From assembly GCA_010909165.1 (NCBI GenBank), contig MU008164.1, positions 1,302,001 to 1,366,000 on the forward strand: a stretch of DNA of 64,000 bases, in the 5' to 3' direction. The notes below the pieces were generated by a model. That model made no database searches and was not told the DNA's origin. It saw nothing but the letters and a program-made list of their open reading frames with translations. Each line of letters starts with the position of its first letter. Positions within the stretch are counted from its first letter, which is position 1. Below, piece by piece: positions 30,659 to 64,000 of the stretch. A program made the position numbers and the translations under genes. The DNA comes from Anthoceros angustus. Its lineage: Eukaryota; Plantae; Anthocerotophyta.

Positions 30659-32314
30659 GGCTGAAGGCCTTTACCGCTTCAAATGGGCCCTGGAACCAGC
30701 GAATAACGCGGCAGGAATTAGGCTACCAGTACCCAATGAAAAAACGGTTACAAGAAGAGAACAACACAAATCTGCCTCCTGAAGCGGCATGCACGACTCG
30801 GACTCTCCACTGAGCATGTGACAAAATCTTTGAGACACGGAGCTCATACTGTCCTAAACGAGTATCACAGCTGCGCACGCTGGTAGCATCCCTTTCTGAG
30901 AAGAAGGGCTCCAGACAGCACCATAGCAGAGGGGAACGAGCAGAGCATGCCAAAAGTCAACCGTATCATCCAGGAAACCGACAGGAAAGGCAGGAACAGT
31001 GAGGAGCAAATCCCACAGGCATACATCCCCGCTGCTCTTGCCGTATGCACCATATGATTCGCCTCAACATCATTTCTGCGTCCTCCCGGAAGATGATGAA
31101 AAAAAAAGCGCGGAAAGCCGCTAAAACTACAGCATACCATCCATGCACGAGCCAGAACGCTGTCGGCACACAAATAACACCAAAACCTGTCGAACAGGAG
31201 ATCGATTCTACCTCTCCTGACCAGTTCAAACCCGTTCCTTCCACAATCGGGTGCAGGCAGACGCTTCCACGGCATCAACCGGAGCACAAACAGCACCAAC
31301 TCTTCCGGAATTCGAACAGAATCCACAACTCTGCTCATGAACCGTCCGCAAAAGATGAGATTCCTTCACTCCATTCTCCAACAATCCGCCTTAACCAGCA
31401 ACAGCACGAAGAAGGAAGCCGCTCCCGCAGAATGCAACCCTTGCAATACCTCGAATGGAATGCATTCACTCACAGCCCCCTCACACGCAGAGGCACAGGC
31501 AGCAAAGAAGCCAGTGAAACCGGCCACGAGCACACTCCGGCGGCAGCAGCAGGCCGCGCAATCCCGATTCCCGGGCCGGTGCATGCCAGCCCGCCAGGAC
31601 CAGGCCCCGCCAACCGGCCCCGCCCGCCGACATGCACGCTCAATTCAAACGCCATCCCGGAATCAAGCCGTTGGAGCCCGGCGGTCCCCGGTGGCCCGGT
31701 GGCCCGGTGGCGGCAGTTAAGGCCGCAAACGGTCGGCTCGGTTGTGTCAGCGGACGTTACGTAAGGCGTTAATTCTTAACTCCGGTTTAGCAGGCTGACA
31801 AAGAGACGTTCACCCCAATAGCGACTCACGGCGCGAGTTCGCCCGACACCGCCATTAAGATAATCACGTTTCGAAATTCGGGCCCGGAAGAACGTTTGGC
31901 CTTCGTACTCCAGAGCTCACATATATGTTCTTCTCTGGAGCCAGGAAGCCTCAACATTCCGGCTTGTTTTACCCGCCTGGAGCAAAATTGCCTGGTGGGC
32001 TGCATTGCGCGCTCTTCCACCCTTCCGCCTCCCGATTCTTCTCTGCGAGCTCCATCCATTGAGCTCGCAATTTTGCTGGGTTGTTGTGGGATTCAGCTTC
32101 GAGAAAGCGGATTTCAGCTCGGAGGACTGACTGATTTCAGCTCGGACTTCGCTTCCAAGGCACTGGTGTGCATCAATTGAGCTCGGCATTGCTGTCGCCT
32201 GCTTCTACCAGCTTGTTGCTTTGTTTGCATTTGGATATCCTCGTTGCTGACGGAAAGGCTGAGCTTGGTCTGTGGGTGTTTTTGATTTCCGGCAGAGGCA
32301 CAAAAGGAAGAACG

Positions 32315-35230
32315 ATGGCGGGGCCGGGGCCGAAAAAGAAGCTTCATGTGGAGGTGGTGAATGCGCGGGCTTTGATGCCCAAGGACGGGCAGGGATCGGC
32401 CAATCCTTACGTGACGCTGGACTACGAGAAGCAGCGGATTCGGACCAAGGTGAAGGACAAGGATCTGAACCCGACATGGAACGAGAAGTTCGAGTTCATG
32501 CTGGCGGACGGGGGAGGGGATGGGGTGCTGGAGGTGAATGTCTACAACGACAGGAAGATGGGCCGGCCGAGCGGGTTCCTTGGGAGAGTGCGAATTCCGC
32601 TCACAGACCTGGCTGTGAAGGGGAAGGAAGCAGTGAAGTACTTCAAGCTGGAGAAGCGGAGCCTCTTCTCCCACATCAGAGGCGAGATCGGGCTGAAGAT
32701 CTACACGGAAGACATCCCTCCTCCCAAGCCAGCAGCCCCGGCAGCGGGTGGAGCAGCCGCAGCTCCAGCAGCAGCTGCTGCTCCCGCTGCGGGAGCTGCC
32801 GCAGCAGCTCCCGCAGCTGCGGCAGCTGCCCCCGCAGCTGGCGGTGACAAGAAGGATGACGGAGCGAAGAAGGATCCCGAGCCCCCGAAACCGAAGCCGG
32901 AGCCGAAGATCGCAGCTTCTGTCGATCCCAAGGAGTATAACCTCAAGATGTCTGATGCCAGGCTGGGAGGAGCGGGAGAAATGCGGCAGACCCTGGCCTA
33001 CGATCTAGTGGAGGAGATGCCGTATTTGTTTGTGAAGCTGGTGAAGGCTCGGGGTCTGGCTGCCCACAAGGATGTGAAGGATGGGAATGCCACCACCAGC
33101 GATCCCTATGCAAAGATCAGTGTTGGGTCTCTGTCTGCGAAGAGCAAGACGGTGGCCAAGAGCCTGGGCCCGGAATGGAACCAGGTGTTCGCATTCTCGA
33201 AGGGGAACCTCCATGGTGGGACTCTCCAGATCGAGCTCTTCGATGAGCCGGAGAAGCCAGAGAAGGACAAGCCTGCCAAGGACCCTGAATTCCTCGGAGT
33301 GGTGATGATGGATGTTGGGGAAGTGCCTGTGAGGAAGCCTCCGGAAAGTCCCCTGGCCCCGCAGTGGTACAAGCTGGTTGGCCCGGAGAATCGTGTGAAG
33401 GGAGATGTGATGTTGGCTGTCTGGATGGGGACTCAGGCGGATGAGGCATTCCAGGATGCATGGCAGTCGGATACCGGGGGGAATCCCAACTTCAGATCGA
33501 AGGTTTACATGTCGCCTAAGTTGTGGTACTTGAGGGTGAAGATCATTGAAGCCCAGGATTTGCTCCCGGCGGAGAAGGGGAGGGTCCCGGAGCCGAGCGT
33601 CAAGACCCATTTGGGGTCTCAGACCTACAACACCAAGCCCTCCAAGAACCGGAGCACGAGTCCGTTGTGGGACGAGGATTTGATGTTTGTTGCTGCGGAG
33701 CCGTTTGAGGACGTGTTGCATTTGATGGTGGAGGATGCGGTGGGGCCGAAGAAGGAGCTGCTGGGACAGGTTAAGATACCGTTGAATACGATTGAGAGGA
33801 GGATTGATGGGAGGCAGGTTGGGTCGAGGTGGTATGTGCTGGACAAGGATGACAAGGGGCAGTATCGGGGGAGGATTCACCTTCGGTTGTGCTTTGATGG
33901 TGGGTACCATGTGATGGAGGAGAGCACCACCCACAGCAGCTGCATGAGGCCTGCTGCGAAGCAGCTGTGGAAGCCGAGTGTGGGGATGCTGGAGCTGGGA
34001 ATTCTGGGAGCTACGGGGTTGCTTCCGATGAAGACCAATGCGGTGAACAATAGGGCCAGCACTGACTCCTACTGTGTTGCAAAGTATGGGCAGAAGTGGA
34101 TCAGGACCAGAACCATCACTGAAACATTCAATCCGAGGTGGAATGAGCAGTACACTTGGGATGTGTATGATCCATGCACTGTGCTGACGGTCTGCGTGTT
34201 TGATAATCGGCATCTGGTTGCTTCTGACAAGCCGGATGCTGTGAAGGATGCTTACATTGGGAAGGTGAGGATCCGGTTGTCTACTCTGGAGAATGACAGA
34301 GTGTATACCAATCTGTATCCCCTGCTGATGCTGACCCAGTCCGGTGTGAAGAAGCATGGGGAGCTGGAGCTGGCTGTGAGGTTCTCGGTGACCTCTACTG
34401 TGAATGTGATGCAGATCTATCTCCAGCCTCCTCTGCCTCAGATGCACTACTACCACCCTCTGGACCAGACCCAGCTGGAGTTTTTGAGGAGCTCGGCCAT
34501 GAAGATTGTGCAGGGGAGGCTGGCCAGGGCGGAGCCTCCTCTGCGGGGAGAGGTTGTGTCGTATGTGCTGGATGCGGACAGCACCATCTGGAGCATGAGG
34601 AGGAGCAAGGCGAATTTTCACAGGATCCTGTCTGTGCTGTCTAGCGCCATCGGGGTGTACAAGTGGTTCCAGGACATCTGCAAGTGGGAGAGCCGGGTGA
34701 CGACGGTGCTGGTGCACGTGCTGTTTCTGATCCTGGTGTGGTACCCGGAGCTCATCCTGCCCACGGCCTTTCTGTATCTGTTTCTGATGGGCGCCTGGAA
34801 CTACCGGTTCCGGCCGCAGGCCCCGCCCTTCATGGACGCCAAGCTCTCGCAGGGGGAGCAGATCGGGGACCCCGACGAGCTGGAAGAGGAGTTCGAGGTG
34901 CTGCCCAACCAAAAGACGCAGGAGATTCTGAAGCAGCGCTACGACCGGCTGCGGAACGTAAGCAGCAAGATCCAGAACGGGCTTGGGGAGCTGGCTTCGC
35001 AGGGGGAGAGGTTCGAGGCTCTGCTCAGCTGGAGGGACCCAAGGGCTACTCTGGTGTTCGTGCTTTTCTGTCTTGTGGCTGCCGTGGTGCTCTATGTCAC
35101 TCCCTTCCGGGTGGTGGCTGTGCTGCTGGGCATCTACGTCATGCGGCCTCCCAGCTTCAGAGATCCCCTTCCTCCCCTTCCTCTCAACTTCTTCCGCAGG
35201 CTGCCATCCAAGGCAGACAGAATTCTCTAG
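32315..35230 (+). CDS. MCTP (multiple C2 domains and transmembrane region; FTIP/QUIRKY family), intronless, ~971 aa
   Basis: Four C2 domains (KLHVEVVNARALMPKDGQGSANPYV; YDLVEEMPYLFVKLVKAR; VYMSPKLWYLRVKIIEAQDL; LELGILGATGLLPMK), Ala/Pro linker after C2A, PRT_C-type end (DELEEEF, GERFEALLSWRDPRAT, NFFRRLPS). Confidence 0.95.
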   Translation: MAGPGPKKKLHVEVVNARALMPKDGQGSANPYVTLDYEKQRIRTKVKDKDLNPTWNEKFEFMLADGGGDGVLEVNVYNDRKMGRPSGFLGRVRIPLTDLAVKGKEAVKYFKLEKRSLFSHIRGEIGLKIYTEDIPPPKPAAPAAGGAAAAPAAAAAPAAGAAAAAPAAAAAAPAAGGDKKDDGAKKDPEPPKPKPEPKIAASVDPKEYNLKMSDARLGGAGEMRQTLAYDLVEEMPYLFVKLVKARGLAAHKDVKDGNATTSDPYAKISVGSLSAKSKTVAKSLGPEWNQVFAFSKGNLHGGTLQIELFDEPEKPEKDKPAKDPEFLGVVMMDVGEVPVRKPPESPLAPQWYKLVGPENRVKGDVMLAVWMGTQADEAFQDAWQSDTGGNPNFRSKVYMSPKLWYLRVKIIEAQDLLPAEKGRVPEPSVKTHLGSQTYNTKPSKNRSTSPLWDEDLMFVAAEPFEDVLHLMVEDAVGPKKELLGQVKIPLNTIERRIDGRQVGSRWYVLDKDDKGQYRGRIHLRLCFDGGYHVMEESTTHSSCMRPAAKQLWKPSVGMLELGILGATGLLPMKTNAVNNRASTDSYCVAKYGQKWIRTRTITETFNPRWNEQYTWDVYDPCTVLTVCVFDNRHLVASDKPDAVKDAYIGKVRIRLSTLENDRVYTNLYPLLMLTQSGVKKHGELELAVRFSVTSTVNVMQIYLQPPLPQMHYYHPLDQTQLEFLRSSAMKIVQGRLARAEPPLRGEVVSYVLDADSTIWSMRRSKANFHRILSVLSSAIGVYKWFQDICKWESRVTTVLVHVLFLILVWYPELILPTAFLYLFLMGAWNYRFRPQAPPFMDAKLSQGEQIGDPDELEEEFEVLPNQKTQEILKQRYDRLRNVSSKIQNGLGELASQGERFEALLSWRDPRATLVFVLFCLVAAVVLYVTPFRVVAVLLGIYVMRPPSFRDPLPPLPLNFFRRLPSKADRIL

Positions 35231-39255: not shown

Positions 39256-42200
39256 ATGGCCACAGTATGGCAACAGGACCCGCTGTGGACCCAACAAATT
39301 GGTGTGTGTACAGGGATTCTACTTGGAGCTCCAGCTCATCTCACTTTAGGGAGTGAACCCCTGGCCAACACAGCCTCCAGGTGCAGCTGTGTAAGGAGCC
39401 CAGCACTTCCGCTTCCGGTGAAACGTGTGGGTGAGGACGGGATTTCCAACGATGGTCGTCGCCAGGAGCAAGAACACTTGTGGCAACAATTTTTTCTGGA
39501 CCCTACTATGTGGTGGGATAACAGACGAGACAAGAAGAGCTCCCGTTCGCCTGACTTCCGGCGTAAGGGGTCCGGCGAGGTGCTGTGGTTGAACAACATG
39601 TTTAAGCCAGCTTGGGTTGATGAGCAGCTCATTTCCTTGGATATGCAGATGGGCCATGGTGCCTCTCCTTCCGAGTCCAGCTCTCCAGATAATCCTGAAC
39701 CTGGGAGGCGTGCAGGATCGGAAATGGGCGTCGTAACGGCTGGAACCGTGAGCTTGTTATGTCAGCAGGGGAAGCTTTCTGAGGCCGTTGGAGCCCTGGA
39801 ATCTCTGGCGCAGACAGACTCTGCTGTTTCTCAGTCTCTGTTTTACATTGTGCTAAAACTGTGTACAGCTAAGAAGGATTTGGTTGTGGGACGACGAGTT
39901 CATGATCTCAGTGTCCAACTTGGGTACGAGTCGAATGCATACTTGGGGAACCATATCTTGCGCATGTATGCAAGTGGAGGTAGGCTAGAGGAGGCCATGG
40001 ATGTGCTCACCAGAGTGGGCAAACCGGATGCCTTCATGTGGTCTTCCATAATCTCCGCATACGCTAAGCATGGGAAACCTAATGAGGCCGTACAATTGTA
40101 CCATGAGATGTGTAGGTCAGGAGTGAAGGCGGATGCTCACGTCTTTGTGGCTGTCCTTCAAGCTTGTGCATTTGCCGCTGACTTGGAATCAGGCAGAAAA
40201 GTGCACAGTGATGTGGTGCAGAGTGGCATTCCTACTAACTTGATTGTTGGCAACTGCCTGGTGGATATGTATGCAAAATGTGGTCAACTGGAAGACGCAC
40301 GCCTGGTTTTTGACAGCATGAACACAAAGGATGTGGTGACATGGAATGCCTGATTGCTGGGTATGCACAGCAAGGACTCGGACAGAGGCGCTTGTGTATG
40401 GACAAATGGAGCAGGGCCTGATTTTGGCTGACCATGTTACTTTTCTTGCCTTCTGAAGGCCTGTGCAAGCACTGGTGCCTTACAGGGCAGGCAGCTGCAC
40501 TCACAGATTGTCGAAGAGGACTGCTGGATAACGTAGTGGTGGGCAACTGCCTGGTGGACATGTATGCAAAATGTGGTGAACTGGAAGATGCACGCCAGGT
40601 TTTGACAGCATGGCCACAAAGGATGTGGTGACATGGACCGCCTGATTGCTGGGTATGCACAGCAAGGACTCCAAGAGGCGCTTGTTGTGTATGGACAAAT
40701 GGAAGAGGCGGGCCTCATTTTGGCTGACCATGTTACTTTTGCTTGCCTTCTGAAGGCCTGTGCAACTGGTGCCTTACAGAAGGGCAGGCAGCTTCACAGA
40801 TTGTCGAAGAGGACTGCTGGATAATGTAGTGTGGGCAACTGCCTGGTGGACATGTATGCAAAATGTGGTGAACTGGAAGATGCACGCCAGGTTTTGACAG
40901 CTTGGCCACAAAGGATGTGGTGACATGGAATGCCTGATTGCTGGGTATGCAGCAAGGACTCGGCCAAGGCGCTTGTTGTGTATGGACAAATGGAGCAGGA
41001 GGGCCTCATTTTGGCTGACCATGTTACTTTTGCTTGCCTTCTGAAGGCCTGTGCAAGCACTGGTGCCTTACAGAAGGGCATGCACTCACAGATTGTCAAA
41101 GAGGACTGCTGGATGACGTAGTGGTGGGCAACTGCCTGGTGGACATGTATGCAAAATGTGGTGAACTGGAAGATGCAGGTTTTGACAGCATGGCCACAAA
41201 GGATGTGGTGACATGGATGCTGATTGCTGGGTATGCACAGCAAGGACTCGAAGAGGCGCTTGTGTATGGACAAATGGAGGAGGCGGGCCTTATTTTGGCT
41301 GACCATGTTACTTTTGCTTGCCTTCTGAAGGCCTGTGGAAGCACTGGTGCCTTACAGAAGGGCATGCAACTGCACTCACAGATTGTTGAAAGAGGACTGC
41401 TGGATGACGTTGTGGTGGGCAACTGCCTGGTGGACATGTATGCAAAATGTGGTGAACTGGAAGATGCACGCCAGGTTTTTGACAGCATGGCCACAAAGGA
41501 TGTGGTGACATGGAATGCCCTGATTGCTGGGTATGCAGAGCAAAGACTCAAGAGGCGCTGTGTATGGACAAATGGAGGAGGGCCTTATTTTGGCTGACCA
41601 TGTTACTTTTGCTTGCCTTCTGAAGGCCTGTGCAAGCACTGGTGCCTTACAGAAGGGCAGGCAGCTGCACTCACAGATTGTTGAAGAGGACTGCTGGATA
41701 ACATAGTGGTGGGCAACTGCCTGGTGGACATGTATGCAAAATGTGGTGAACTGGAAGATGCACGCCAGGTTTTGACAGCATGGCCACAAAGGATGTGGTG
41801 ACATGGAATGCCCTGATTGCTGGGTATGCACAGCAAGGACTGGGCCAAGAGGCGCTTGTTCTGTATGAAAAAATGGAGCAAGAAGGGCTCATTGTAGCTG
41901 ATCATGTCACATTTGCTTGCCTCCTTAAGGCCTGTGCTTGCACTGGTGCCTTACAGAAGGGCCGGCAGCTGCACTTACTGATCCTCGAAAGAGGAGTGAT
42001 GGATAATGTAGTGGTGGGCACCTGCCTGGTGGACATGTATGCAAAATGTGGTGAACTGGAAGATGCACGCCAGGTTTTTGACAACTTGGCCACAAAGAAT
42101 CTGGTGACATGGAATGCCCTGATTGCTGGGTATGCACAGCAAGGACTCGCCAAGAGGCGCTTGTATGGACAAATGGAGGCAGGCCTCATTTTGGCTGACC

Positions 42201-43609
42201 ATGTTACTTTTGCCTTCTGAAGGCCTGTGCAAGCACTGGTGCCTTACAGAAGGCAGGCAGCTGCACTCACAGATAGTCGAAAGAGGACTGCTGGATGACG
42301 TTGTGGTGGGCAACTGCCTGGTGGACATGTATGCAAAATGTGGTGAACTGGAAGATGCACGCCAGGTTTTTGACAGCATGGCCACAAAGGATGTGGTGAC
42401 ATGGAATGCCCTGATTGCTGGGTATGCACAGCAAGGACTCGCCAAGAGGCGCTTGTGGTGTACGGACAAATGGAGCAGGAGGGCCTGATTTTGGCTGACC
42501 ATGTTACTTTTGCTTGCCTTCTGAAGGCCTGTGCAAGCACTGGTGCCTTACAGAAGGGCAGGCAGCTGCACTCAGATTGTCGAAAGAGGACTGCTGGATG
42601 ACGTAGTGGTGGGCAACTGCCTGGTGGACATGTATGCAAAATGTGGTGAACTGGAAGATGCACGCCAGGTTTTTGACAGCATGGCCACAAAGGATGTGGT
42701 GACATGGAATGTCCTGATTGCTGGGTATGGTGCTTGTGATGAAGGTCACAAGGCACTAGCTTGTTTTGAGGAGATGTTAGTTGCCGGTGTTCAGCCTGAT
42801 GATGCTACTTTTACTTGCCTTCTAGTAGCATGCAGTCATGAGGACTGGTCCACGAGGGTCGCAAACACTTTGATTCCATGGCTGAACAGCATGGCATCAA
42901 ACCTACTATTGAGCATTACACCTGCATGATTGATCTTCTTGGGCGTGCTGGCCATTTAGATGAAGCAGAGAAAATGCTTTTGACATGCGAGGGGCAAAGT
43001 AATGTTGTGGGCTTGAGGTCTTTGTTGAATGCCTGCAAAATTCACGGGGATATAGAAAGGGCTCTGTGGTGTTTCGAAAGGATTGTTAGGCTGGACCCCC
43101 AGGATGCGACCGCATATGTGCTCATGGCCAATGCCTACGCAGATGGAGGTATGTGGACCGATGTAGACAGGATTGAAACACAGAGACGGGTAGCAGGAGC
43201 TAACAAGAAGCCTGCAGTCACGACCATTGAGGTGAACAAGCAGGTACATCGCTTTGTGGTGGGAGAAAGGAGAGAGGATATTGCGCTTAAGGTAGAGAGC
43301 ACGAATGCCCGTCTGAAGCAGGAAGGAGGCCACATACCTCACACGAAATTGGTATTGAAGCCACTGTCTGAAAAGGAAAAGGAAGATGCGCTTTGTGGCC
43401 ATGCTGAGAAGCTAGCTCTGGCGTTTGGTCTCTTGAACACTCCGAGTGGGACACCTCTGATGGTAACGAAGAACCTACGCATGTGCAGTGACTGCCACAG
43501 TTCCACGGAGATCATGTCAAGGCTTGAACAGAGAGACATTGTCGTAAGGGATGGGTACCGTGTGCATCGATTCGCAGATGGTTCTTGCAGTTGTAAGGGT
43601 CGACCCTGA
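39256..43609 (+). CDS. PLS-class PPR protein with N-terminal PDF motif and C-terminal E-DYW:KP (GRP-type) deaminase; candidate U-to-C editing factor; frameshifted within the repeat array (pseudogene or assembly error)
   Basis: WWDNRRDKKSSRSPDFRRKGSGEVLWL; PLS triplets; HYTCMIDLLGRAG; KKPAVTTIEV; HAEKLALAFG; KNLRMCSDCH; CSCKGRP*. Confidence 0.85.
40240..42730 (+). repeat. near-identical ~300-bp tandem repeat (PLS triplet), 9 anchor copies
   Basis: ctgcctggtgga(c/t)atgtatgcaaaatgtgg at ~40254, 40547, 40838, 41131, 41422, 41716, 42021, 42312, 42616. Confidence 0.9.
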
Positions 43610-49559: not shown

Positions 49560-50160
49560 TGTTTTATATTAGCCGGCGTCTCCGTAAGTTGGCGATGTAA
49601 GAAGCAAACAAGTCTTGCCTTAAGTTCAACAGAGGTGGAATATAAAGCTCTTACGGAAGCAGGTAAAGAGGTTGATTGGGAGCGCTCACTCTTAAGTGAT
49701 ATTAAATGGCTCCAACCTCAGCCTACCCTGCTTAATTGTGATAATATGTCGGCTATCGCGTTAGTCGCTAATCCTCGTTATCATGCTCGTACGAAGCATA
49801 TTGAGTTATATCATCATTATATTCGTGATATTACTTCACGAGGAGTGGTGGTGGTTGGTTATATAAATACCAAGGATAATACTGCCGATATATTTACTAA
49901 GTCTCTTCCGTCTTATAAACATAATAAATATAGAGAAGGACTAGGAGTAGTTGAAGGCAGTGACATAATCACCTTAGCAGCTGAGGAGGCAAAGTTAACG
50001 ACAAAATAACACTTTGCAAGCTTAAGTGGGAGCTATCCGAGTGACGAGAGAGGATGAAGCTAATATGCATTAGATCCAATCATCTAGTCACTTAGTACAT
50101 AGTCTTAGAAGCATGTCTTTGTGTGCCTAGAGCTGTGTGGGGAGTGTGGAGATAAAACAT
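49560..50160 (+). mobile_element. Ty1/copia retrotransposon remnant (RT end/RNase H, possible PPT)
   Basis: VSWRCKKQTSLALSSTEVEYKAL..CDNMSAIALVANPRYHARTKHIE..NTADIFTKSL; purine-rich ggggag before TG at ~50140. Confidence 0.9.
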
Positions 50161-50745: not shown

Positions 50746-51822
50746 TCATTGTAGGGAACTCTGTGAGGGTTGGAGATAGTCTTGGAGGGGAGACTTGCAC
50801 GAGCAATTCAGATTAAACAGAGGAATCAAGCTGGCTGCGGCTGCAGGCGCGGGTGCGGCTGCAGTGTTAGCTTGCCCGTTCGCACGCAAATAAACGCCGT
50901 GCAAGCTGTCCGGGGAAGGGACTACATCATTGGAACTTCCGATTACATTTGCTGGATTGGAAGCAGCACATCCATTGCTCAAGTGCAGTTCCCTTCTGCA
51001 TTTTATTGTTGCGCAACAGTTGGACTTCTGAAACAAGTGGTGGGTACCCCCGGAGAAGAACGAAATACTGCTCATGAACGAGCTTCAGGCACTTAAATGC
51101 AAAGTTTCCACCATTATTAATCCATCTACTTCCTGCAATTGAGTCGGAACTGGGTGACAGCCCCACAGAAGAACAACAATGAAACCCTCATGTTTGAGAC
51201 ATCAACGCAACAAGTAGATCGCAGAGTACTTCAGTAGAATCCTTATGATCTTCCGCACATATGCACGTCTGAGTCCCTTGTTCATGTAGCGGGTCCTAGT
51301 TCCGCATATATGTGAAGTCTTTTCACCCAGTATCCCTGTCACCACTGAATGGTACCCAGGAATGTTCCGCTTTGTCTACTGTCATTTGTGAAATATAGGC
51401 AGGACTCCAGCAGTTTAAGTGAGGGACATCCTGTCACAGCCTGGGCTGGTCAGAAAGATGTAACACACATCTCGTATGCAAAAAATCTAGAAATCATTCA
51501 ACCAGAGGAATTCTTATATGGACTTCCTTCTTGAAACCAAAAGCTAGAGCTACAGTTTGACAACTCGCTGGTTTCTTCCTCCCTAACGTCCAGCGCTATC
51601 ACCTGTTCATCGACACAAGGAGGATGTGAGACGTTTCTCCTGCCAATTGCACGCGAGCCTAAACACAGATGAGCAGAAATGGAGAAATGAGAAAGATAGT
51701 ATTAGAAACAGTTTGCTGCACCAACAGCCAATTGCTGGGAACGATACCTTCAGGATCGCTGATAGAAGGCATTACAGGCTGGTTACTTATGAAGGACCAT
51801 GGCCACACCGAACTCCCGCTGG

Positions 51823-54800
51823 CTAGGTGAGTGGACTATATGGTAAAGACCAGTATAGCCCTCTTGTGAGTGTGGAGTACAACTCGGGGCACTGGAATTC
51901 CTTCTGGGGGGGCATTCCTGCTTGGCCTTGGAGCTTGTTCTCCATCTCCGTGACCTTGCCAATCACGCTTGTTAGAATGCTCAGCACATCTGCTGTTTGA
52001 GAGCCCTCAACGATGGAGTCCATCAAAGCTGTGATAAAGTTTGTGCCTTTCTCGGTATCCCTGAAGGATTTATGTCCATGACTGGTCGAGAAAAAAATGA
52101 GACAATCGCTCACAGAATGGAGGAATCGGACTTCTCCGGCTCTCTTGCTCACATATTGGCTACTCTCAACTTCAGAGTCCACGGCTTTCTTGCTTGTGAT
52201 AAGACAGCCACCGCCCCGACAAGCATTGATCACAAACACTTTAGGCTTGTTTGCAAGAAACCTGGATTCAGAGATCGGCCTCAAGATATCATCAACAACA
52301 TATAGCTTCGCACCTGCTCCACTGATAACAATGTATTCCCTTCCATCGTCTTCGATTCCCCCATGAGCATTAATGCAACACAGAAAGCAGTCGTCGTTAG
52401 CTAGGAGGGGGAGCTTCGCAAGTTGTCTAAGACGTGCTTTGATCTCCTCAGGATCGTTCACCACAACTTCGGTATCAAACATCAAGCACTTGAGAAGAGC
52501 TTCAAGTCGTCCTCTGTCTACGGCTGCTCCAGCTCTGTCCTCTTCCATGCTCACTATCACTGCCAAACCTCTCCGTCTGCCTGCTTGCACGCTGTGGTTA
52601 GGATAATTCCCAGCGATATGTTGTACTTTCTGCACTTCCCTCACATCCGGGAATAATTGTGTGGGAGTTTCCCGAGACAAGCTGCTACTGGATTTCAATC
52701 CTGCAACAACAGGCGCAACCTAAGAGTTTGCAGGGAACAACGCATACTTATGTCATGCTATTGAGAAACTACATGTGCAAAACTAGGACACATGACTGAG
52801 AGCAGCGACGAACCTTGAAACTCTGCTTCGGCTTTGGCAAGGTCCTCTCTTTGCCCCAAGATGACATGACCGTCCACCACGGTTGCAAACTCTTTGTTGG
52901 CCTTCAAAATGGGTGCCCGGTTCTGCGAGCTGTGGAAGATAGCTCTCCAAGATTGTGTGTAGTGAGCGTGGCCTTTTTCTTTTGAAGCAGCCACCTCTTT
53001 AATAAGCTTATGTGTTTGAACACACTCCTGTTTCCTGTATCTACATAACGTGAGTGATGTCACACATTCATGTCGAAGGACACCTTCAACCAATGTAACT
53101 CCTCCACAACCTTGATATGAGATACAAAATGAGCGGATTTGAGATATAATATGTTCCTGCAGAAATTCTAAGGATTTTGCGTAGCCCTGGGTTGATCGAA
53201 CTAGTATATCTATGTAACAACCTATTTCTGGATTGAATTCCACAAATACGTCAAGAAATTGAATAGATAATAGTAGAACGTTGGGCTGCAAATGTATCCC
53301 AGAGTCCATTGGATTATCCTCATCAACCCAATCATTTTTCAAACAATATGCATAGAAAAAAACCTATCATCCGTATCAACAACAAAAATTATAAGTACAT
53401 AGTTGTATAAAATATTAAGGTTTCGACGAGTCAAAAAGAAAGAAAGGGAATGAGTTGAGAATAAAGTGCACACCTGCAAACGAGGGAAAAAGCCCGGCGT
53501 GAGAAATGTGCAATCCTGATCAAGACATTGCAAACGCAAACCCATGAAGATGTAATCATGGGAATCACCACCATGTGAAGGCCATTCCAGTTGTCTATCA
53601 ACACCTACTAGGTCGCCCTTTGCATAAGTGCATACTGGTATGAAATAACGCACATGATCTTCTTCATCCCTGCTTTTGTAACAGAGGTGCAACTCAAGCA
53701 ATAGTTGGATAAACTGTTCTACACTCACAATGGTCTCAACAACCCCAATCTTGTGTAAAGACATCTTAAGAAGTTTGCTCAACTCATATTCGCTCATAAA
53801 CCCATTTTGATCTTGAAGCCAATCTCGTTCATCGCCATCTGATACTCCAAATATACTAATTAGTTGCCCAAAAACTCCCATTCCTAACCATTGGAGGTTG
53901 ATGACCATAAGCCCCGACATTTCAAAATAAATGATCTCCCCTGAATCCCTGAGGTAGGATGCTACGACTTTCCAACTATCCTCCTTTACCACGAAATCCA
54001 TGAGAAACCTTTTGCAGTCCTCCGATATTAGTGGATGACTTAATGCCACTTGGCATGTGTCATGGAACAACTCACTAAACTTACTAATAGAAATGATTGG
54101 CATACCTTGCTGATCTTCAGCCCACCTTTGTACATGTATCCTTGTTTGCTCACAAATATTGGGAATGGGGGTCAACTTTCTAATAAGTTGCTGCAACTTT
54201 TGCTCTATAGTAGTGCGTACACCATGTACATCTTTCCAATTCCGCCCATTGATGAAAGTAGGTTCATCTCCTACCTCCACCAAATCCATAAACTTTTTCT
54301 TCACCACTAACATTTCATCACATATTGCAACAAAACGTCTACCCCCTTTCAACTTGTCAGCAAATGTCACCACCACATGCACGTAAGGTTTTACCTGCTG
54401 AACTAATTGTGAATTGGAAGCAATAAACTTAAGCCAGTAAATAAATTCTTCTCTGAAATGCTTTCTATCCTTCATCTCCATGTTTGAGCCTTTCGCACTA
54501 AACTGGAATGGATTATAAACAAATAAGAACATGGACGAATTATTGACACGAGGAAAAACAAAATCATGAAGAGAGTGATACTCTCTATGCCCTGCAAGAT
54601 CCCAAACTGCAATCCTCATGGTTGGAGCATCTTTTATCACCTTCACCTCAAAGCCACGTGTTCGAGGCATATCATCTGCAATAGTTTCGCTCTCTGATTC
54701 AACACAATGTTCATGTGTTTCCATCTCCATAAATGTATTCCTTATAGTAGTCTTCCCTGAAACAACGTCATTTCATATTAATCTTACTATTTACAAAGAC

Positions 54801-57800
54801 AAGTATAACAATAAGCGACAAAACGTCCGTTGAATCTTGTCAGCCACTTTGTGTTCGCCAACATGTACATGAGAATCCGGATCATTTATGAACACGCATG
54901 AAAATCCAGAGACAAGAGAATAAAAACACAGGATGACACTTACCTGCATATGGAAATCCACAGAGTACCAGGCGGCATGATTTCACAGGCATTGTGGGAA
55001 CCCCAGCGAGAGCTCTTCGATATTCCCTGTTTTGCCGTAGTATTTCATCGACTGCAGCACCTCTTCCCTGTCTTTTCCACACAGTATTCTCAAAAGATAC
55101 ACTCTCCAAGTTGGTGTTCACCTGCAGGGCCTGCATGAGCTCTTGGAACATACCATCGTCCAACCCTTCCCAGCCATCCAAGACCAACCTTTTGAGGTAT
55201 CGACTGGTCTGCAACGACTTGAAAAACGTAATCGAGAGGTTGGATGATCCCAAACTCTCCTGAACTAGGTGTAGACTTTCCACTGTCTTGCACCTCTGCA
55301 GGATCGGCATCAACTTCCAGTAATCGTCGCTAACACTAGAGCTACCATGTCGGACTGTGAGACGATTAATGCTGCTGTTGTCGCACAACCCCTCCAATCC
55401 CTGGCTTATGAAGCAGCTAGATAGATCGAGATGCCTTAAAGTGGTGTTAAAGCGAAGCAAGCGAGCCACAGCTTCTCCCAACGCAGCGGTGACAGGCTGC
55501 TGTCCTGCTCCCCATACTTCTAGCTGGAGGTGCGTGACAGACTTGTTGACAGCAAAGGGCCTGGGAGCAACACTGGGAAGCTTCTCCTCTCCGTCCCGCA
55601 TACCAGGGGTGAATGCTCGGGCTAACAGCGTGGCCGTCATCCCGGCCTGCTCTGGGCTCCACACTCCAAATCCTATTCTCAGCGAGTCAAGTGTGGTGTT
55701 TTGCGCCAGAGCATTCCCTATCATCACTGCTCCCACCTCATCCAGCCGTATGTCCCAAATCCCAAGGTTGAGAAGTGCGGAAGTGCTAGTCAAGATTTCA
55801 GCCAGGTGTGCTGCTCCAGCACCTTCTCCTATACCCCTGTTTCCCGAAAGAGAAAATCCACGGAGCACCGTGCTGCGATTATGTCGCAGGGCTGCAGCTA
55901 TGCGACCCAGTCCATCGGCAGTCATGCCAGTGTATCCCATGTTCAGACATTGCAAGGTGCGGCTAGATTGTAAGGTAGCGGCGAGTGCGGTGCAGACTGG
56001 AGCCGCTCCAAAACCACAGTAGCCATGGAGATTCAAGTGTTCCAGTACTGCATTCGAGCTTAGGCCTTCCAAGAGTGCCGTCGCCTCTGCCACCGTCACC
56101 CTGTAAATTCGACGGCAACGAGGGTTGAGAACTATTGTTCTCAGCGTGGGGCACTTACCGATAGCTGTCATAAGGCGCAAGCGCAGGTCCCGTTCCGCCT
56201 TTGCATATTCAATATCCTCCTTGAACAAGTGCCCCAAGGCTTCCACATGAGGAAGACGAGTGAGTGTAGGCGAAGGTGAGTCCAGCTCGGTAAGCAGGGC
56301 AAGCAGGTCCGGATCCTGAGAGAGAGGAACTGGAATGGTGACATTTCCATTCGGATGTTGAGAAACAGGAGCTGGCATGGTGACAAGGAACACAGCCAAC
56401 CCGTCAATTCCCACACTGCCAGCAACAGCTAGCAGACATGCATTCAAGCATGTAGTTGCAACAACAACAGCTTGGAAGCTGGGACAAACGCAAGTATTGT
56501 GAGTAGTTTCATACCTGAGGCGCCTGAAGCCGTTGCAATGGTGGCCATCGGCGGTCGTGGCACGTCTTCAGAACCTGCGGAAGTGATCTCCCTGTGAGGT
56601 GAAAGTTTGTGGGTTCCTACAGATGCAAATCAGGACAACGATAGGTAGCTAGCTTGGGGCACCTACCCTGCCGTCCAGCGCTCCTTGTGCGTATGCTTCT
56701 TGTGAGAGCATTCTGGATATGTTTCCCCTTGCCTTCACTTTCCCAGGATGTCCCCTTGATAGAAATGTTCTCGAGGACGTTATGTCGCAGAGAGCGCATC
56801 AAGTCGTAGAACATGTAGTCATCCAACCCATCCCAGGCATCCAACACAAGCGTCCTGATGCTGCGGTTGTTGTGCAATCCTTGGAAAAACGCTTTGGTGA
56901 ACCTGGATGGACCAAAGGGCTTCATAAACTGAAACTTCAGCTCCTGAACAGACTTGCACTCCTCCAGGATGGTGATGAGGGTCGGATCCATGTCACCATC
57001 GTCCGCATGCCGCGTATGTATGACTCTGAGTTTGGTGATGCTGCTGCTTTCACGCAGCGCTCCCAATCCGCGTGTCACGAAGAAGCTGGCAAGTCCGAGC
57101 TCCCGGAGAGCACGGTTGGAGCGGATCACGCGAGCTAGGGCTTCTCCTAGCCCCGGCTCCACCGCCTCCTGGCCTCCCGGACACTCAAGAAACAGCATTG
57201 TGATGGAATGATTGGAAGCCCCGGCCCGAGGAGTCTCCCGATCTGCCGTGTGCCACACCAAAGCTTCGAGCAGTGGAATGATGAACATGGGCGCTGGCTG
57301 CTTTGGATTCCATGGGGCAGGATCTCCGATTCCAAGGCTGGTGAGTGTGGTGGTGTGCGCCAGGGCCTCTGCGATCACCACGGCTCCTTCCTCGTCCATG
57401 CCTATATCGCCAATCCAGAGAGCGCGGAGCGTGGGCGAGTTGGCGAGAATGTCGGCCAAGTGTTGCGCCCCGACAGCATTCCCGATGTGGTTCCCACAGA
57501 GAGCCAATCTGGATAGGACTGAGGTGCCATTGCGTCGAAGGCCTGCAGCGATGTAACCCAGTCCTTGTGCACTCAATCCCACATACTGCAGATTGAGGTA
57601 GTCCAATGAGCGATAAGATCTCTGGATGACGGCGGTGAGTGCCTGCACGCAGGCTGCTGTTGTCCCAAAGCCCACGAAGCTTGACAAGATCAGCTCCTGC
57701 AGCACAAGGTTGTGTTGCAAGCCTGAAAAGAGCGCCAGCGCCTCTACCTGCCTCACGCTGTAACCCAGTCTCCGCAGGGGATTCAGGTCAATCTCCCTGA

Positions 57801-59376
57801 GCGTGCGGCATTTGCCGAAGGCTGTGAGCAGGCGCAGGCGCACATCCCACTGCCACTCGCCACGGTGTTGACACTCCCCGTCTTGGCAATTGCAATCGAA
57901 GTAGCTCCCCCACAAATCCACAGAAGGGAGTTGCTGCAGCGCTGGCGAGTCGGACTCCAGGTCCGCAAGCAGCGCAAGCAGTTCCGGCTTCACTCTTGTA
58001 TCCCTCAACCTCTTGGCCAAAAGTTCGCCTTTGCCATGCTTTTCCCACGAGGTGCCCTTAATGGAGATGTGCTCCAGCTTGGTGTTGGTGGACAGAGATT
58101 GGATCAGCTCTTGAAACATGTGGTCGTCCAGCCCATCCCAGCTATTCAACACCAGCTTCTTGATGCAAGGCTTGTTGTGCTTCAACCCCTGGAACAACTC
58201 CTCGGTGAAGTTGCTACGCCCGTAGGGTTTCAAAAACCCGAACTGCAGCATTCGAAGCTTCACGCACTTGTGCAAGATAGGCATCAGCACAGGATCCAGC
58301 TCCTCCTCATCCAGGGAATGGCCGTGCTCCAGTACAAGGTGCGTGATGCTGCTGTTGTAAGCCAGTGCGGACAAGCCGCGCGTCACAAAATAGCTGCTTA
58401 CGTACAGGAGCTTCAAGGTGGTGTTGGAGTGCAGCATTCCAGCCACCGCTTCTTCGAGCCTACCCTCCACAGGGCTGCCATCCTCACCTCCCGGCAACCC
58501 GGATACTTCAAGCCATAACTGGGTGATGGATTGGTTAAGGGCAGCAGTAGCACATGTGAGACTGTGAGACTGCAACTCCGACCAGCTCGAGGAGGGCACA
58601 CCGCTACGGGGGCTCAAGGCACGCAAGATAGGAATCAACATAGCTGCCTGCTCAGGATTCTTGTGCCGGTCATATCCGATATCAAGCCTGTCGAGCGTGG
58701 TGGTGAGCGCCACAGCCTCTGCAATCAGCCCGGCGCCCTCATGGTCCATGCCTATCCCAAACAGTCCCAAGGTTCGCAGAGCAGGCGAGTGGGTGAGGAT
58801 GGCGGCAACGTGCCGCGCCCCGGCAGCGTTCCCTATCATATCGTTGTCGTCAAGATACAACTTGCTGAGTAGTGAGCCGCTGCTCTTGTCTCGCAAGGCT
58901 GCGGAGATATGAGCCAAGCCTTCCACACTCAGCCCAATTGCCCGCATATCCAGATACTCCAACCTGCAACCGGGTCGCAGGACGGCAGCAGCGAGTGCAA
59001 TGCACGCTTCCGTCGTCCCGAATCCTCCGAACCCGTACAAGCTCAGGTTTTCCAGCGCTGGATTGTGCTGCAACCCCTTCAGCAGCGCTGTTGCCTCCAC
59101 GTCGCTCACGCTGTACTTCCCACGCTTCCTCAAGGGATTCAGATCGATGGTTCTCAGGCTTCTGCAGTTGCCGATCGCGCTCATGATGCGCAAGCGCAGA
59201 TGGCGCCTCGATTTCCCCAAAGCTTCATGTTCGCCGGCGTTCAAGAAGTAGGAGCCCCAGGAAGCCGCAGCATCCGGAGGAGGAAGCGCAGTGACGCTCG
59301 GCGACTGGGACTCGAGGCTCTCCAGCAGGGCAACCAAAGCGGCAGGAAGAGGAGGAGGAAGAGGCTGCTCCGCCAT
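51823..59376 (-). CDS. 3x LRR(RI-like) - Roc GTPase - COR - caspase fusion protein (TORNADO1-like Roco-caspase), predicted 2302 aa
   Basis: Exons 59376-56667, 56574-56515, 56371-54944, 54756-53474, 53363-52814, 52700-51823 (6909 nt, in frame). All five introns GT-AG, 92-187 bp. Roc GFPYAG|KTT, RTRGFEV, WDLAGHREY, VTFADK; COR FLTPGFFPRLQV; caspase AHG and NACRG. A shorter 1381-aa model from ATG 56378 is also possible. Confidence 0.8.
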
Positions 59377-63589: not shown

Positions 63590-64000
63590 AGGAACGCCAG
63601 AGCTACCTTCTCAGCGTGCCCACCACAAAGTACATCTTCCTCTTCCTTCTCACCCCGTGGCGTCAACACCAACTTCGTGGGAGGTACGTGGCCCCCTTCC
63701 TGCTTCAGACGTGCACTCGTGCTCTCTACCTTAAGCGCAATATCCTCTCTTCTTCCACCCACTAGAAATCGATGTGCCTGCTTTCTCACCTCATAGTTGC
63801 CACTGCAGGTTTCTTGTTAACTCCTGCTACCCTTCTTCTTGTTTCATCAATCCTGTCCACATCGGTCCACCTACCTGCATCTGCGTAGGCATTGGCAATG
63901 AGAACATATGAGGGCGCCTCGTGGGGGTCCAGCCTAACAAAGCTTTCGAAACACCAGATTTCCCCCTCTCTATCCCCGTGACATTCGCAGGCATTCAACA
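63590..64000 (-). pseudogene. truncated E-DYW:KP PPR paralog (continues beyond window)
   Basis: NACECHGD..WCFESFVRLDP..KKPAVAT / HRFLVGGRREDIALKVESTSARLKQEGGHVP..LCGHAEKVALAF, closely related to 43030-43430; frameshift near 63790; lacks CxxC and GRP. Confidence 0.85.

What the first reader, a model, noticed from the sequence alone, without database searches (positions are those of the whole stretch)
51823..52700. Animal-type (C14A-like) caspase domain with Asp-specificity residues, not a metacaspase
Seen: RRGLAVIV, DRAGAAVDRGRLEALLKCLMF, DCFLCCINAHG (His codon 52363-52365), FLANKPKVFVINACRG (Cys codon 52219-52221), SDCLIFFSTSHGHKSFRDTEKGTNFITAL, DVLSILTSVIGKV, QCPELYSTLTRGLYW. Known: these align motif for motif with caspase-3 (RSGTDVD, LSHG, KPKLFIIQACRG, DFLYAYST..SWRNSKDGSWFI, ILTRVNRKV, QIP..SMLTKELY). 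The two S1 arginines that confer P1-Asp specificity (caspase-1 R179/R341) appear retained, and Q283 is Asn. Plant metacaspases instead have DxCHSG and cut after Arg/Lys. The p20-p10 linker contains KAVD|S, a plausible autoprocessing site. Inference: a true Asp-specific caspase in a plant, from horizontal transfer or ancient retention.
Basis: partly seen in the sequence, partly recalled or inferred. Interest (0 to 1): 0.9.

Follow-up and report, generated by a model that had tools for sequence, protein, structure and literature searches.

The report
Plant sensor gene ending in caspase
A land plant carries an intact, transcribed gene whose giant protein joins sensor repeats and a GTPase switch to a protease built like an animal caspase, an enzyme type that plants are generally said to lack.

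Summary
A 291-codon open frame at 51823-52698 (minus strand) encodes a full Peptidase_C14 domain (Pfam E 4e-31).

By sequence and by predicted fold it sits with animal caspases: caspase-8/-3/-9 give Z about 28 at 24-30% identity. MALT1 (Z 21.7) and plant metacaspases (Z 18-19, about 15% identity) are further off. Both S1 arginines are kept, and the S1 Gln is Asn.

Contigs of a run that holds spliced RNA define five GT-AG introns. Joined, they give one unbroken frame: three RI-type LRR modules, Roc GTPase, COR, then the caspase.

The contig also carries plant genes (MCTP/QUIRKY, PPR-DYW), so this is not contamination.

The domain belongs to a well-supported plant-only clade (100/99). Members include Marchantia and Riccia hydrolase-caspase proteins, another Roco-caspase, and caspase exons spliced to NB-ARC-LRR receptors.

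Asp specificity, activity and origin remain untested; the tree has no outgroup.

The scan had already noted broken copies of this family elsewhere in this genome. This copy is intact. I found no paper describing it.

The parts
51823..52700 (-). Last exon: a linker of about 40 aa, the caspase (Peptidase_C14) domain, and the stop codon at 51825-51823
   Evidence: ORF; Pfam E 4e-31; PDB caspase-8 E 1e-15; AF2 model pLDDT 89.5; exon start fixed by an RNA contig joint
52363..52365 (-). Catalytic His112 codon (INAHGG)
   Evidence: column conserved in at least 90% of 69 homologues
52219..52221 (-). Catalytic Cys160 codon (NACRG)
   Evidence: column conserved in at least 90%
52534..52536 (-).
   Evidence: alignment to caspase-8; invariant in the plant clade
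52225..52227 (-). Asn158 codon, at the position of the S1 Gln of QACxG
   Evidence: In the 13 rows of A2, 10 have Asn here and 2 have Ile (P0004, P0005). The following residue varies: NAC in 8 rows, NSC or NTC in 3
52060..52062 (-). Arg213 codon, aligned with the second S1 arginine (caspase-1 R341)
   Evidence: kept in every plant-clade member that keeps the catalytic His
52177..52179 (-). Asp174 codon of KAVD|S, a candidate inter-subunit cleavage site
   Evidence: lies at the end of the low-pLDDT loop 165-174; not conserved in the clade; inference only
52701..52813 (-). Intron (113 nt, GT..AG) between the COR-B-like exon and the caspase exon
   Evidence: an 885-nt contig of run X1, with no mismatch, skips it; GT/AG and phase checked
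52814..53363 (-). Exon: COR-B-like region. No Pfam hit, but collinear with the same region of L001.
   Evidence: blastp to the L001 COR-B+caspase ORF gives E 1e-47
53364..53473 (-). Intron (110 nt, GT..AG)
53474..54756 (-). Exon: Roc GTPase (DLAG switch II) and COR-A
   Evidence: Pfam Roc E 2.3e-5 and COR-A E 4.6e-4, both under the gathering score; Atlas features 0.95 to Roc/COR-A clusters; blastp to the L001 Roc-COR ORF gives E 4e-37
54757..54943 (-). Intron (187 nt, GT..AG) that splits the P-loop GFPYAGK|TT
54944..56371 (-). Exon: third RI-type LRR module and the start of Roc (P-loop)
   Evidence: PDB phmmer hits LRRC34 at 1e-9, NLRP14 LRR at 3e-6 and NOD2 at 4e-4
56372..56514 (-). Intron (143 nt, GT..AG)
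56515..56574 (-). 60-nt mini-exon (linker between LRR modules 2 and 3)
56575..56666 (-). Intron (92 nt, GT..AG)
56667..59376 (-). Exon with LRR modules 1 and 2. The first in-frame ATG is at 59376-59374, and the frame stays open up to 59571. The 5' end is not verified by RNA.

Best explanation
This is the C-terminal protease domain of an intact, transcribed land-plant gene. The protein has at least 2,302 aa: three RI-type leucine-rich-repeat modules, a Roc GTPase, a COR region and a caspase domain. The domain has the caspase fold, the His-Cys dyad and the two arginines that bind an acidic P1 side chain in animal caspases. It belongs to a plant-only sister clade of the animal caspases, not to the metacaspases.

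The most likely mechanism is inferred, not shown. The LRR modules sense a ligand. The Roc-COR switch changes its nucleotide state and its dimer geometry. That brings two C-terminal caspase domains into the caspase-type dimer across strand beta-6, as happens with initiator caspases. The active protease then cuts after Asp (perhaps also Glu, given Asn in place of the S1 Gln), in itself and in downstream targets, to trigger an immune or cell-death response.

Shown here: the gene structure, its splicing, the domain identity, the residues, the clade and the fusion partners. Inferred: catalytic activity, P1 preference, activation by dimerisation, and the immune or death role.
For: - Domain identity: Pfam Peptidase_C14 E 4e-31. 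The best PDB sequence matches are all caspases, with caspase-8 at 1e-15. The AF2 model has pLDDT 89.5 and pTM 0.88. The listed top 50 of at least 500 significant Foldseek PDB matches (E <= 0.001) are all caspases.
- Fold ranking by VIA-align over 48,161 representatives: caspase-8, -3 and -9 at Z 27.7-28.3 and 24-30% identity; MALT1 at 21.7; AtMC4 at 19.0 and AtMC9 at 18.1 (14-16% identity); Yca1 at 15.0.
- Residues: His112, Cys160, Arg55 and Arg213 are present. Both arginines are kept in all plant-clade members that keep the catalytic His.
- Gene structure: five GT-AG introns defined by mismatch-free contigs of run X1 join into a single 2,367-codon frame with one stop, at the end.
- Plant context: MCTP with PRT_C, and PPR-DYW, on the same contig. 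The MCTP ORF is 56-61% identical to bryophyte and lycophyte proteins.
- Clade: 14 plant-like rows form one side of a branch at 100/99 in a careful LG+C20 tree. Named members are Marchantia polymorpha, M. paleacea and Riccia fluitans.
- Fusion partners of the clade point to receptor and executor roles. A second LRR-Roc-COR-caspase exists in another organism (L001). A caspase exon is spliced in frame to NB-ARC-LRR in L002. The same neighbourhood recurs in L013-L015.
- Dimer: the homodimer prediction scores 0.55 against a best control of 0.03. That mark was reached by 21 of 30 proteins solved as pairs of one chain and by 0 of 23 solved as single chains. The runs agree in at least 59% of contacts and the partner's pLDDT is at least 73. 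The interface is the last strand (ORF 270-280) and the preceding helix (ORF 237-251), which I recognise as the caspase dimer interface.
- Architecture precedent: LRR-AP-GTPase-COR proteins with a C-terminal caspase effector are described as predicted conflict systems in bacteria (PMC8195603).
Against: - No enzymology: activity and P1 preference rest on residues alone.
- The S1 Gln is Asn.
- The KAVD|S site is not conserved in the clade.
- Roc and COR-A score below Pfam's gathering thresholds, and COR-B has no Pfam hit.
- The AF2 model was built from an alignment rich in animal caspases, so fold likeness to them is partly built in.
- The dimer pass may come from the model's memory of solved caspase dimers.
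- Some clade members have Tyr for the catalytic His, so non-catalytic roles exist in the family.
- The 5' end of the gene is unverified.
- Run X1 is only guessed to be RNA, although its contigs skip the introns exactly.
- No candidate substrate gene was found in this window.
Confidence: 0.6

Rival explanations
1. The domain is a non-catalytic or differently specific caspase-fold module. It would act as a scaffold or dominant-negative regulator, like c-FLIP or the many inactive caspase domains in bacterial conflict systems, or it would cut after a non-acidic residue.
For: Relatives in the same clade have Tyr for His (P0014, P0030, L002b) or lack the Cys (P0005). c-FLIP's protease-like domain matches the model at Z 23.2. 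About 70% of caspase domains in the effector position of bacterial ternary systems are reported inactive (PMC7159879). The S1 Gln is replaced by Asn.
Against: This copy keeps His112, Gly113, Cys160 and both S1 arginines. The arginines are kept wherever the catalytic His is kept, which is the pattern expected of selection on an acidic-P1 pocket.
Confidence: 0.2
2. The whole LRR-Roc-COR-caspase gene, or its caspase domain, came to an early land plant from bacteria. Its likeness to animal caspases would then reflect a shared bacterial source, not a specific plant-animal link.
For: Bacterial LRR-AP-GTPase-COR proteins with caspase effectors exist (PMC8195603). The Roc-COR exon's nearest feature clusters include Chloroflexota and Cyanobacteriota Roco proteins. 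The plant clade is not nested inside any supported animal subfamily.
Against: Among 1.84 billion representatives, every named hit outside the plant clade is metazoan: cricket, sponge, scallop, mite, rotifer and bug. A pattern scan of 185,579 prokaryotic genomes found no relative, and neither did the plasmid search. Both scans have limited reach.
Confidence: 0.25
3. The caspase sequence is animal or other foreign DNA mis-assembled into a plant contig, or a dead relic.
For: Best sequence and fold matches are animal caspases. Earlier scan notes report broken copies elsewhere in this genome.
Against: The exon is spliced in frame to upstream exons of a 7.1-kb open frame by mismatch-free contigs of a run from the same organism. 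Plant genes flank it on the same contig. Its closest relatives are liverwort and plant-like sequences, at only 33-41% identity to anything known.
Confidence: 0.02

Closest known systems
Animal caspases (MEROPS C14A), e.g. human caspase-8, -3, -9 and Spodoptera Sf-caspase-1
   Same: Same fold, at Z 25-28, rmsd 1.6-3.0 A and 24-30% identity. Shared features are the His-Cys dyad in xxHG / xACRG motifs, both S1 arginines, a flexible inter-subunit linker after the Cys, and a predicted dimer across the last strand.
   Different: It forms a separate plant-only clade. It has Asn for the S1 Gln. It has no CARD, DED or short prodomain, and instead sits at the C-terminus of an LRR-Roc-COR protein. Activity and specificity are untested.
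Plant metacaspases (C14B), e.g. Arabidopsis AtMC4 and AtMC9
   Same: Same superfamily (Pfam PF00656, clan CD) and the same kingdom.
   Different: Much weaker match: Z 18-19 and 14-16% identity, against Z 28 for caspases. The S1 residues here are basic, whereas metacaspases use acidic residues to bind Arg/Lys (established knowledge). There is no LSD1-type zinc finger prodomain and no long type-II linker.
Bacterial LRR-AP-GTPase(Roc)-COR-effector conflict proteins with a caspase effector (Kaur, Iyer, Burroughs, Aravind 2021, PMC8195603)
   Same: Same domain order: variable LRRs, a Roc-type GTPase, COR, and a C-terminal effector that can be a caspase. Multiple paralogues per genome occur there too, as the scan's earlier notes report for this genome.
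   Different: Those are prokaryotic and known only from computational analysis. This one is a spliced eukaryotic gene. Its caspase domain is nearest to metazoan caspases among named sequences, and no bacterial relative was found. Common descent was not tested.
Inflammasome and apoptosome sensors (NLRP1, NLRC4, Apaf-1) that activate caspases by induced proximity
   Same: The logic of an LRR sensor, an NTPase switch and a caspase is the same. Relatives of this domain are spliced directly to NB-ARC-LRR receptors.
   Different: Here the switch is a Roc-COR GTPase, not a STAND ATPase. Sensor and caspase are one polypeptide, with no CARD or PYD adaptor step.
Marchantia polymorpha Mp6g00860 / Mp6g00900, M. 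paleacea Mapa_003498 and Riccia fluitans R1flu_002472 (UniProt automatic name 'Caspase family p20 domain-containing protein')
   Same: Same plant caspase clade, at 28-36% identity. They share the (I/V)xME motif before the S1 Arg and the Asn-x-Cys-Arg active-site motif.
   Different: Their N-terminal partner is a set of repeated alpha/beta-hydrolase domains, not LRR-Roc-COR.
Other Roco proteins: TORNADO1 of seed plants, LRRK2, DAPK1, and brown-alga ROCOs proposed as immune receptors (PMC11378527)
   Same: An LRR + Roc + COR core. DAPK1 also links Roc-COR to a death-signalling C-terminus (own knowledge).
   Different: I know of no eukaryotic Roco protein described with a caspase domain, and none appeared in the papers searched.

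Membership tests
Caspases (MEROPS C14A) | Caspase-hemoglobinase fold with a p20-like and a p10-like part in one chain | tested here: met
   AF2 model has pLDDT 89.5. VIA-align gives Z 28.3 to caspase-8 chain 4jj7_A, rmsd 1.6 A over 207 residues. The listed top 50 of at least 500 significant Foldseek hits are all caspases.
Caspases (MEROPS C14A) | Catalytic His and Cys in the (S/A)HG and QACxG motifs | tested here: met
   AH112GG and NAC160RG align with LSHG and QACQG of caspase-8; these columns are conserved in at least 90% of sequences.
Caspases (MEROPS C14A) | S1 pocket residues Arg179, Gln283 and Arg341 (caspase-1 numbering) | tested here: inconclusive
   Arg55 and Arg213 align with the two arginines, but Gln is replaced by Asn158.
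Caspases (MEROPS C14A) | Cleavage after Asp | not testable with these tools
   Needs enzymology.
Caspases (MEROPS C14A) | Closer to caspases than to paracaspases, metacaspases or orthocaspases | tested here: met
   The best 60 of 159 PDB sequence hits are all caspases. Z is 23-28 for caspases, against MALT1 21.7, AtMC4 19.0, GSU0716 17.9 and Yca1 15.0.
Caspases (MEROPS C14A) | Phylogenetic position inside C14A on a rooted tree | tested here: inconclusive
   The plant clade is one side of a 100/99 branch against 55 animal-type rows. No metacaspase or paracaspase sequence could be fetched as an outgroup.
Caspases (MEROPS C14A) | Homodimer across strand beta-6 | tested here: inconclusive
   Prediction scores 0.55 against a best control of 0.03, with the interface at ORF 270-280 and 237-251. 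The pass may come from memory of solved caspase dimers.
Metacaspases (C14B) | Acidic S1 pocket for Arg/Lys, and greatest similarity to metacaspases | tested here: not met
   The aligned S1 positions hold basic residues. Identity to AtMC4, AtMC9 and Yca1 is only 13-16%, with lower Z.
Roco proteins | Roc GTPase domain with G motifs | tested here: inconclusive
   P-loop GFPYAGKT and DLAG are present. Pfam Roc scores E 2.3e-5 at 25.0 bits, under the 27-bit cut-off, and the P-loop lies on the previous exon. Atlas features score 0.95 to Roc/COR-A clusters.
Roco proteins | COR domain directly after Roc | tested here: inconclusive
   COR-A scores E 4.6e-4 at 20.5 bits, under the 35.3 cut-off. COR-B has no Pfam hit. 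The region is collinear with L001.
Roco proteins | N-terminal leucine-rich repeats | tested here: met
   RI-type LRR: LRRC34 at 1e-9, NLRP14 LRR at 3e-6, NOD2 at 4e-4. The three modules are 40-43% identical to each other.
Bacterial LRR-AP-GTPase-COR-caspase conflict systems | Same domain order with a caspase effector | tested here: met
   Architecture, compared with the description in PMC8195603. This is a likeness of architecture only.
Bacterial LRR-AP-GTPase-COR-caspase conflict systems | Common descent with the bacterial proteins | not tested
   No bacterial member could be fetched. The scans found none.

The most novel reading that the evidence does not exclude
Non-seed land plants have a caspase-based immune or cell-death pathway of their own. 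A plant-specific clade of Asp/Glu-directed caspases would be wired directly into receptors: at the C-terminus of LRR-Roc-COR proteins, as here, and at the N-terminus of NB-ARC-LRR receptors. Activation would be by receptor-driven dimerisation, followed by cleavage of executors. The gasdermin-like genes that the scan noted beside other copies are candidate targets. This would be a one-polypeptide inflammasome that seed plants later lost.
Probability: 0.25. Interest if true: 0.95.

Novelty: new variant of a known kind. Interest (0 to 1): 0.8.

Why it matters
Papers and reviews state that plants have metacaspases but no caspases. One example is the abstract of PMC12521494. The caspase-like activities seen in plant cell death have been assigned to unrelated proteases.

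This gene is intact, spliced and transcribed. Its protease domain is nearer to animal caspases than to metacaspases and keeps the acidic-P1 pocket arginines. That makes the question directly testable in bryophyte model plants.

Its fusion partners are an LRR-Roc-COR switch here, and NB-ARC-LRR receptors and hydrolase repeats in relatives. These link it to receptor-triggered responses. They also bear on how sensor-NTPase-caspase death machinery arose in bacteria, animals and plants.

It would give the first eukaryotic Roco protein that I know of with a protease output. That is also useful for understanding how Roc-COR switches drive effectors.

Tried and rejected
- The search for homologous proteins with the 291-aa exon found nothing. 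With the plant-clade profile it returned only 3 hits. The word index does not reach this family.
- The scan of prokaryotic genomes with the clade profile gave 71 pattern matches, none a relative. tblastn against plasmids found no match. Both have limited reach and do not exclude bacterial kin.
- The metagenome scan gave 7 weak fragments of no use.
- No metacaspase, paracaspase or orthocaspase sequence could be fetched by any tool. The tree is therefore unrooted, and the transfer-or-retention question stays open.
- Pfam finds no family for the COR-B-like exon, for the first two LRR modules, or for the L001 Roc-COR ORF.
- PDB sequence search of the Roc-COR exon gave only E of about 0.4 to Rac, Rab and LRRK2 Roc.
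- No gasdermin or other candidate substrate was found among the ORFs tested in this window.
- Paper searches found no description of plant C14A-type caspases, Roco-caspases or caspase-NLRs. Subscription journals are not covered.
- Contamination was considered and rejected.
- Model coordinates cannot be read, so S1 geometry was not measured.
- The joined (spliced) protein was never handed to a database or folding tool; those searches were done exon by exon, by reference. The join was made only inside local scripts, to check the frame and to compare with the window and with L001.
- One call failed on a frame slip and was corrected.
Full report
**1. Observation**

- Pfam's Peptidase_C14 model matches residues 43-282 over its full length. 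E is 4e-31, at 108.9 bits against a 21.4-bit cut-off.

**2. It is the last exon of a very large gene**

Upstream on the same strand lie long open frames with RI-type leucine-rich repeats and a Roc GTPase signature.
- One public run of the same organism (X1) holds 91% of the sampled words of 51700-54800.
- Its contigs, laid on 51700-57600, skip five segments exactly: 52701-52813, 53364-53473, 54757-54943, 56372-56514 and 56575-56666. The long contigs have no mismatches.
- All five segments begin with GT and end with AG on the minus strand. Joining the exons in a local script gives one frame of 2,367 codons whose only stop is the last codon.
- The first in-frame ATG is at 59376-59374, which gives at least 2,302 aa. 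The 5' end is not verified by RNA.
- X1 is only guessed to be RNA, but contigs that remove GT-AG introns precisely come from spliced transcripts.
- At the variant sites in the caspase exon, part of the depth keeps the window's own letters (table 3). So this copy, and not only paralogues, appears covered there.

**3. Domain order**

- Three modules of about 480 aa are 40-43% identical to each other. They match RI-type LRR proteins and the LRRs of animal NLRs: LRRC34 at 1e-9, NLRP14 at 3e-6, NOD2 at 4e-4.
- The P-loop GFPYAGK|TT is split by the 187-nt intron, and DLAG follows.
- Pfam Roc (E 2.3e-5) and COR-A (E 4.6e-4) are both under the gathering scores. A language-model feature search puts the exon with Roc/COR-A clusters at 0.95, and all ten best hits that carry a family share that family or clan.
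- The next exon has no Pfam hit. It is collinear with the region before the caspase in a second organism (L001).
- In L001 the LRR end, Roc-COR and COR-B+caspase align with this protein in the same order, at E 2e-6, 4e-37 and 1e-47.
- I read the protein as LRR x3 - Roc - COR - caspase. The Roc-COR assignment is well supported but sub-threshold.

**4. It is plant DNA**

- The same contig carries a single-exon MCTP/QUIRKY-type gene: four C2 domains plus the plant PRT_C domain, E 1.5e-80 and 5e-64.
- It also carries PPR ORFs, one with an E motif and a DYW deaminase, and a further PPR E motif at the window's end.
- The MCTP ORF is 56-61% identical to proteins of Marchantia, Sphagnum, Ceratodon, Physcomitrium, Calypogeia, Diphasiastrum and Selaginella. 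Nothing named is closer.
- So the source is a land plant about equally distant from liverworts, mosses and lycophytes. That fits the 'hornwort-like' label of earlier scan notes. I did not prove that label.

**5. What kind of C14 domain**

By sequence:
- The best 60 of 159 PDB hits are all caspases: caspase-8 at 1e-15, Sf-caspase-1 at 5e-14, and caspase-6, -3 and -7.

By predicted fold:
- An AlphaFold2 model from a 69-sequence alignment has pLDDT 89.5 and pTM 0.88.
- Foldseek counted at least 500 significant PDB matches (E <= 0.001), and the 50 listed are all caspases.
- An exhaustive comparison with 48,161 representative chains ranks them as follows:

| Structure | Z |
|---|---|
| Caspase-8, -3, -9 (rmsd 1.6-2.7 A, 24-30% identity) | 27.7-28.3 |
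| Pro-Sf-caspase-1 | 25.1 |
| CED-3 | 23.9 |
| Caspase-4 | 23.8 |
| c-FLIP | 23.2 |
| Dronc | 23.0 |
| MALT1 | 21.7 |
| AtMC4 | 19.0 |
| AtMC9 | 18.1 |
| GSU0716 | 17.9 |
| Legumain | 17.1 |
| Yca1 | 15.0 |

- The model's alignment is rich in animal caspases, so the fold ranking is not fully independent of the sequence result. The identity gap (24-30% against 13-16%) is independent.

S1 pocket:
- The caspase-8 alignment puts Arg55 on the DRNG arginine, Asn158 on the Gln of QACQG, and Arg213 on the SYRN arginine.
- In the plant clade Arg55 is invariant. Arg213 is kept in every member that keeps the catalytic His. It is lost only in the two aligned members with Tyr for His.
- That pattern fits selection for an acidic P1 pocket.
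- Asn at the Gln position is in 10 of the 13 aligned rows; two have Ile. From my own knowledge, Drosophila Dronc, which also departs from QAC at this motif, cuts after Glu as well as Asp. A relaxed Asp/Glu preference is therefore possible.

Candidate autoprocessing site:
- KAVD174|S lies at the end of the only disordered loop, ORF 165-174, 14 residues after the Cys. That is a caspase-like place for autoprocessing.
- The site is not conserved in the clade.

**6. Relatives**

- A full HMMER scan of 1.84 billion representatives gave 1,571 hits. Only four have E at or below 1e-30, and none is more than 41% identical.
- Named hits outside the plant group are all animals: cricket, sponge, scallop, mite, rotifer and bug.
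- Named hits inside it are Marchantia polymorpha (Mp6g00860, Mp6g00900 and allelic entries), M. paleacea and Riccia fluitans. UniProt names them automatically 'Caspase family p20 domain-containing protein'. In Marchantia the domain follows alpha/beta-hydrolase repeats.
- In a careful LG+C20 tree of 69 rows, the 14 plant-like rows form one side of a branch with support 100/99, in 100% of bootstrap trees. They are not nested in any supported animal subfamily.
- No outgroup could be fetched. The root, and with it the choice between transfer and retention, is open.
- Scans for bacterial relatives found none, but they have limited reach.

**7. Fusion partners as a guide to function**

- Two paralogues of another organism (P0002 and P0005, same run) carry a region like the window's COR-B-like exon before the caspase. 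For P0002 the contig also shows LRR and Roc-COR upstream.
- In three JGI metagenome samples, a caspase exon of the clade ends at a GTAAGT donor. It is joined in frame through a CAG acceptor to an 867-aa exon with NB-ARC (E 6e-33) and LRRs. These units sit in tandem arrays.
- The order caspase, then an ORF of about 250 aa, then NB-ARC-LRR recurs in contigs of three further runs.
- So the domain sits where plant receptors carry their executor domains.
- Earlier scan notes add LysM-caspase (about 3 kb beyond this window), RPW8-like-caspase and gasdermin neighbours elsewhere in this genome. I did not test those.

**8. Mechanism**

- COR is the dimerisation device of Roco proteins (Gotthardt et al. 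2008, as cited in PMC7159879). Here the caspase follows it after a linker of about 40 aa.
- A homodimer prediction of the caspase exon scored 0.55 against a best control of 0.03. That mark was reached by 21 of 30 proteins solved as pairs of one chain and by 0 of 23 solved as single chains. The runs agree in at least 59% of contacts, and the partner's pLDDT is at least 73.
- The interface is symmetric, on the last strand (ORF 270-280) and the preceding helix (ORF 237-251). I recognise this as the caspase dimer interface.
- The pass may come from memory of solved caspase dimers. It shows likeness, not binding.
- My reading: ligand sensing by the LRRs and the nucleotide state of Roc-COR set the geometry of a dimer. 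The dimer activates the caspase by proximity, as with initiator caspases. Cleavage after Asp/Glu then follows.
- Every step after the domain assignments is inference.

**9. Comparison and novelty**

- The architecture LRR - AP-GTPase - COR - caspase is described for bacteria as a predicted conflict system (PMC8195603).
- I found no paper on a eukaryotic Roco-caspase, on caspase-NLR fusions, or on C14A-type caspases in plants.
- A 2025 paper still states that plants lack caspases (PMC12521494).
- The liverwort proteins are in databases under automatic names only.
- The scan itself has noted this family many times on other pieces of this genome, mostly as broken copies. The copy here is intact and spliced.
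- I class it as a new variant of a known kind.

**10. Limits**

- There is no enzymology, no rooted tree, no coordinates for the S1 pocket, no verified 5' end and no substrate.
- The spliced protein was not sent to any search or folding tool. Those searches were made exon by exon, by reference.

Noticed in passing
L002:1855-5561; also L003, L013, L014, L015: In metagenome and SRA contigs of plant-like organisms, a caspase exon of the same clade is spliced in frame (GTAAGT...CAG) to an NB-ARC-LRR exon. Caspase and NB-ARC-LRR units form tandem arrays, and some units have an extra ORF of about 240-260 aa between the two. That ORF has no known family. Together this is a caspase-NLR architecture that I did not find described.
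   Followed up: partly
window 32168-35230 (+): A single-exon MCTP/QUIRKY-type gene (4 C2 domains + PRT_C). Its best named relative is Marchantia Mp6g00440, which lies on the same chromosome and about 40 gene numbers from the Marchantia caspase-clade genes Mp6g00860 and Mp6g00900. This may be old linkage of the caspase locus across bryophytes, or coincidence.
   Followed up: no
P0014, P0030, L002:7538-8365, P0005: Several members of the plant caspase clade have Tyr in place of the catalytic His, and two of them have also lost the second S1 Arg. One member (P0005) has SGHG for NACRG. These are probably non-catalytic paralogues sitting beside active ones.
   Followed up: partly
window 51897-52130: Run X1 holds contigs that differ from the window at 8 sites (51984-52120) inside the caspase exon. 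Their depth is several times higher than that of the window's own allele. This indicates closely related, more strongly represented paralogues in the same organism.
   Followed up: no
window 54944-59376 (-): The sensor part is an internal triplication: three LRR modules of about 480 aa, 40-43% identical to each other. Each opens with a P(E/D)LLALL..L(E/D)S.SP motif.
   Followed up: partly
window 39256-43609 (+) and 63786-63998 (-): PPR ORFs. One at 39256-40353 has PPR repeats. One at 42878-43609 has an E motif and a DYW deaminase domain. A further PPR E motif runs off the window's end. These are typical of non-seed land plants with heavy organelle RNA editing.
   Followed up: no
window 49635-50009 (+): A 124-aa ORF that reads to my eye like the C-terminal end of a Ty1/copia polyprotein, although Pfam gave no hit. 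It lies in an AT-rich stretch (46-50 kb, GC 0.36-0.37) just downstream of the caspase gene.
   Followed up: no
window 22001-24000 and 10001-12000: Very GC-rich stretches (GC 0.76 and 0.72) with overlapping long ORFs on both strands and no Pfam family for the two ORFs tested. Unexplained.
   Followed up: no
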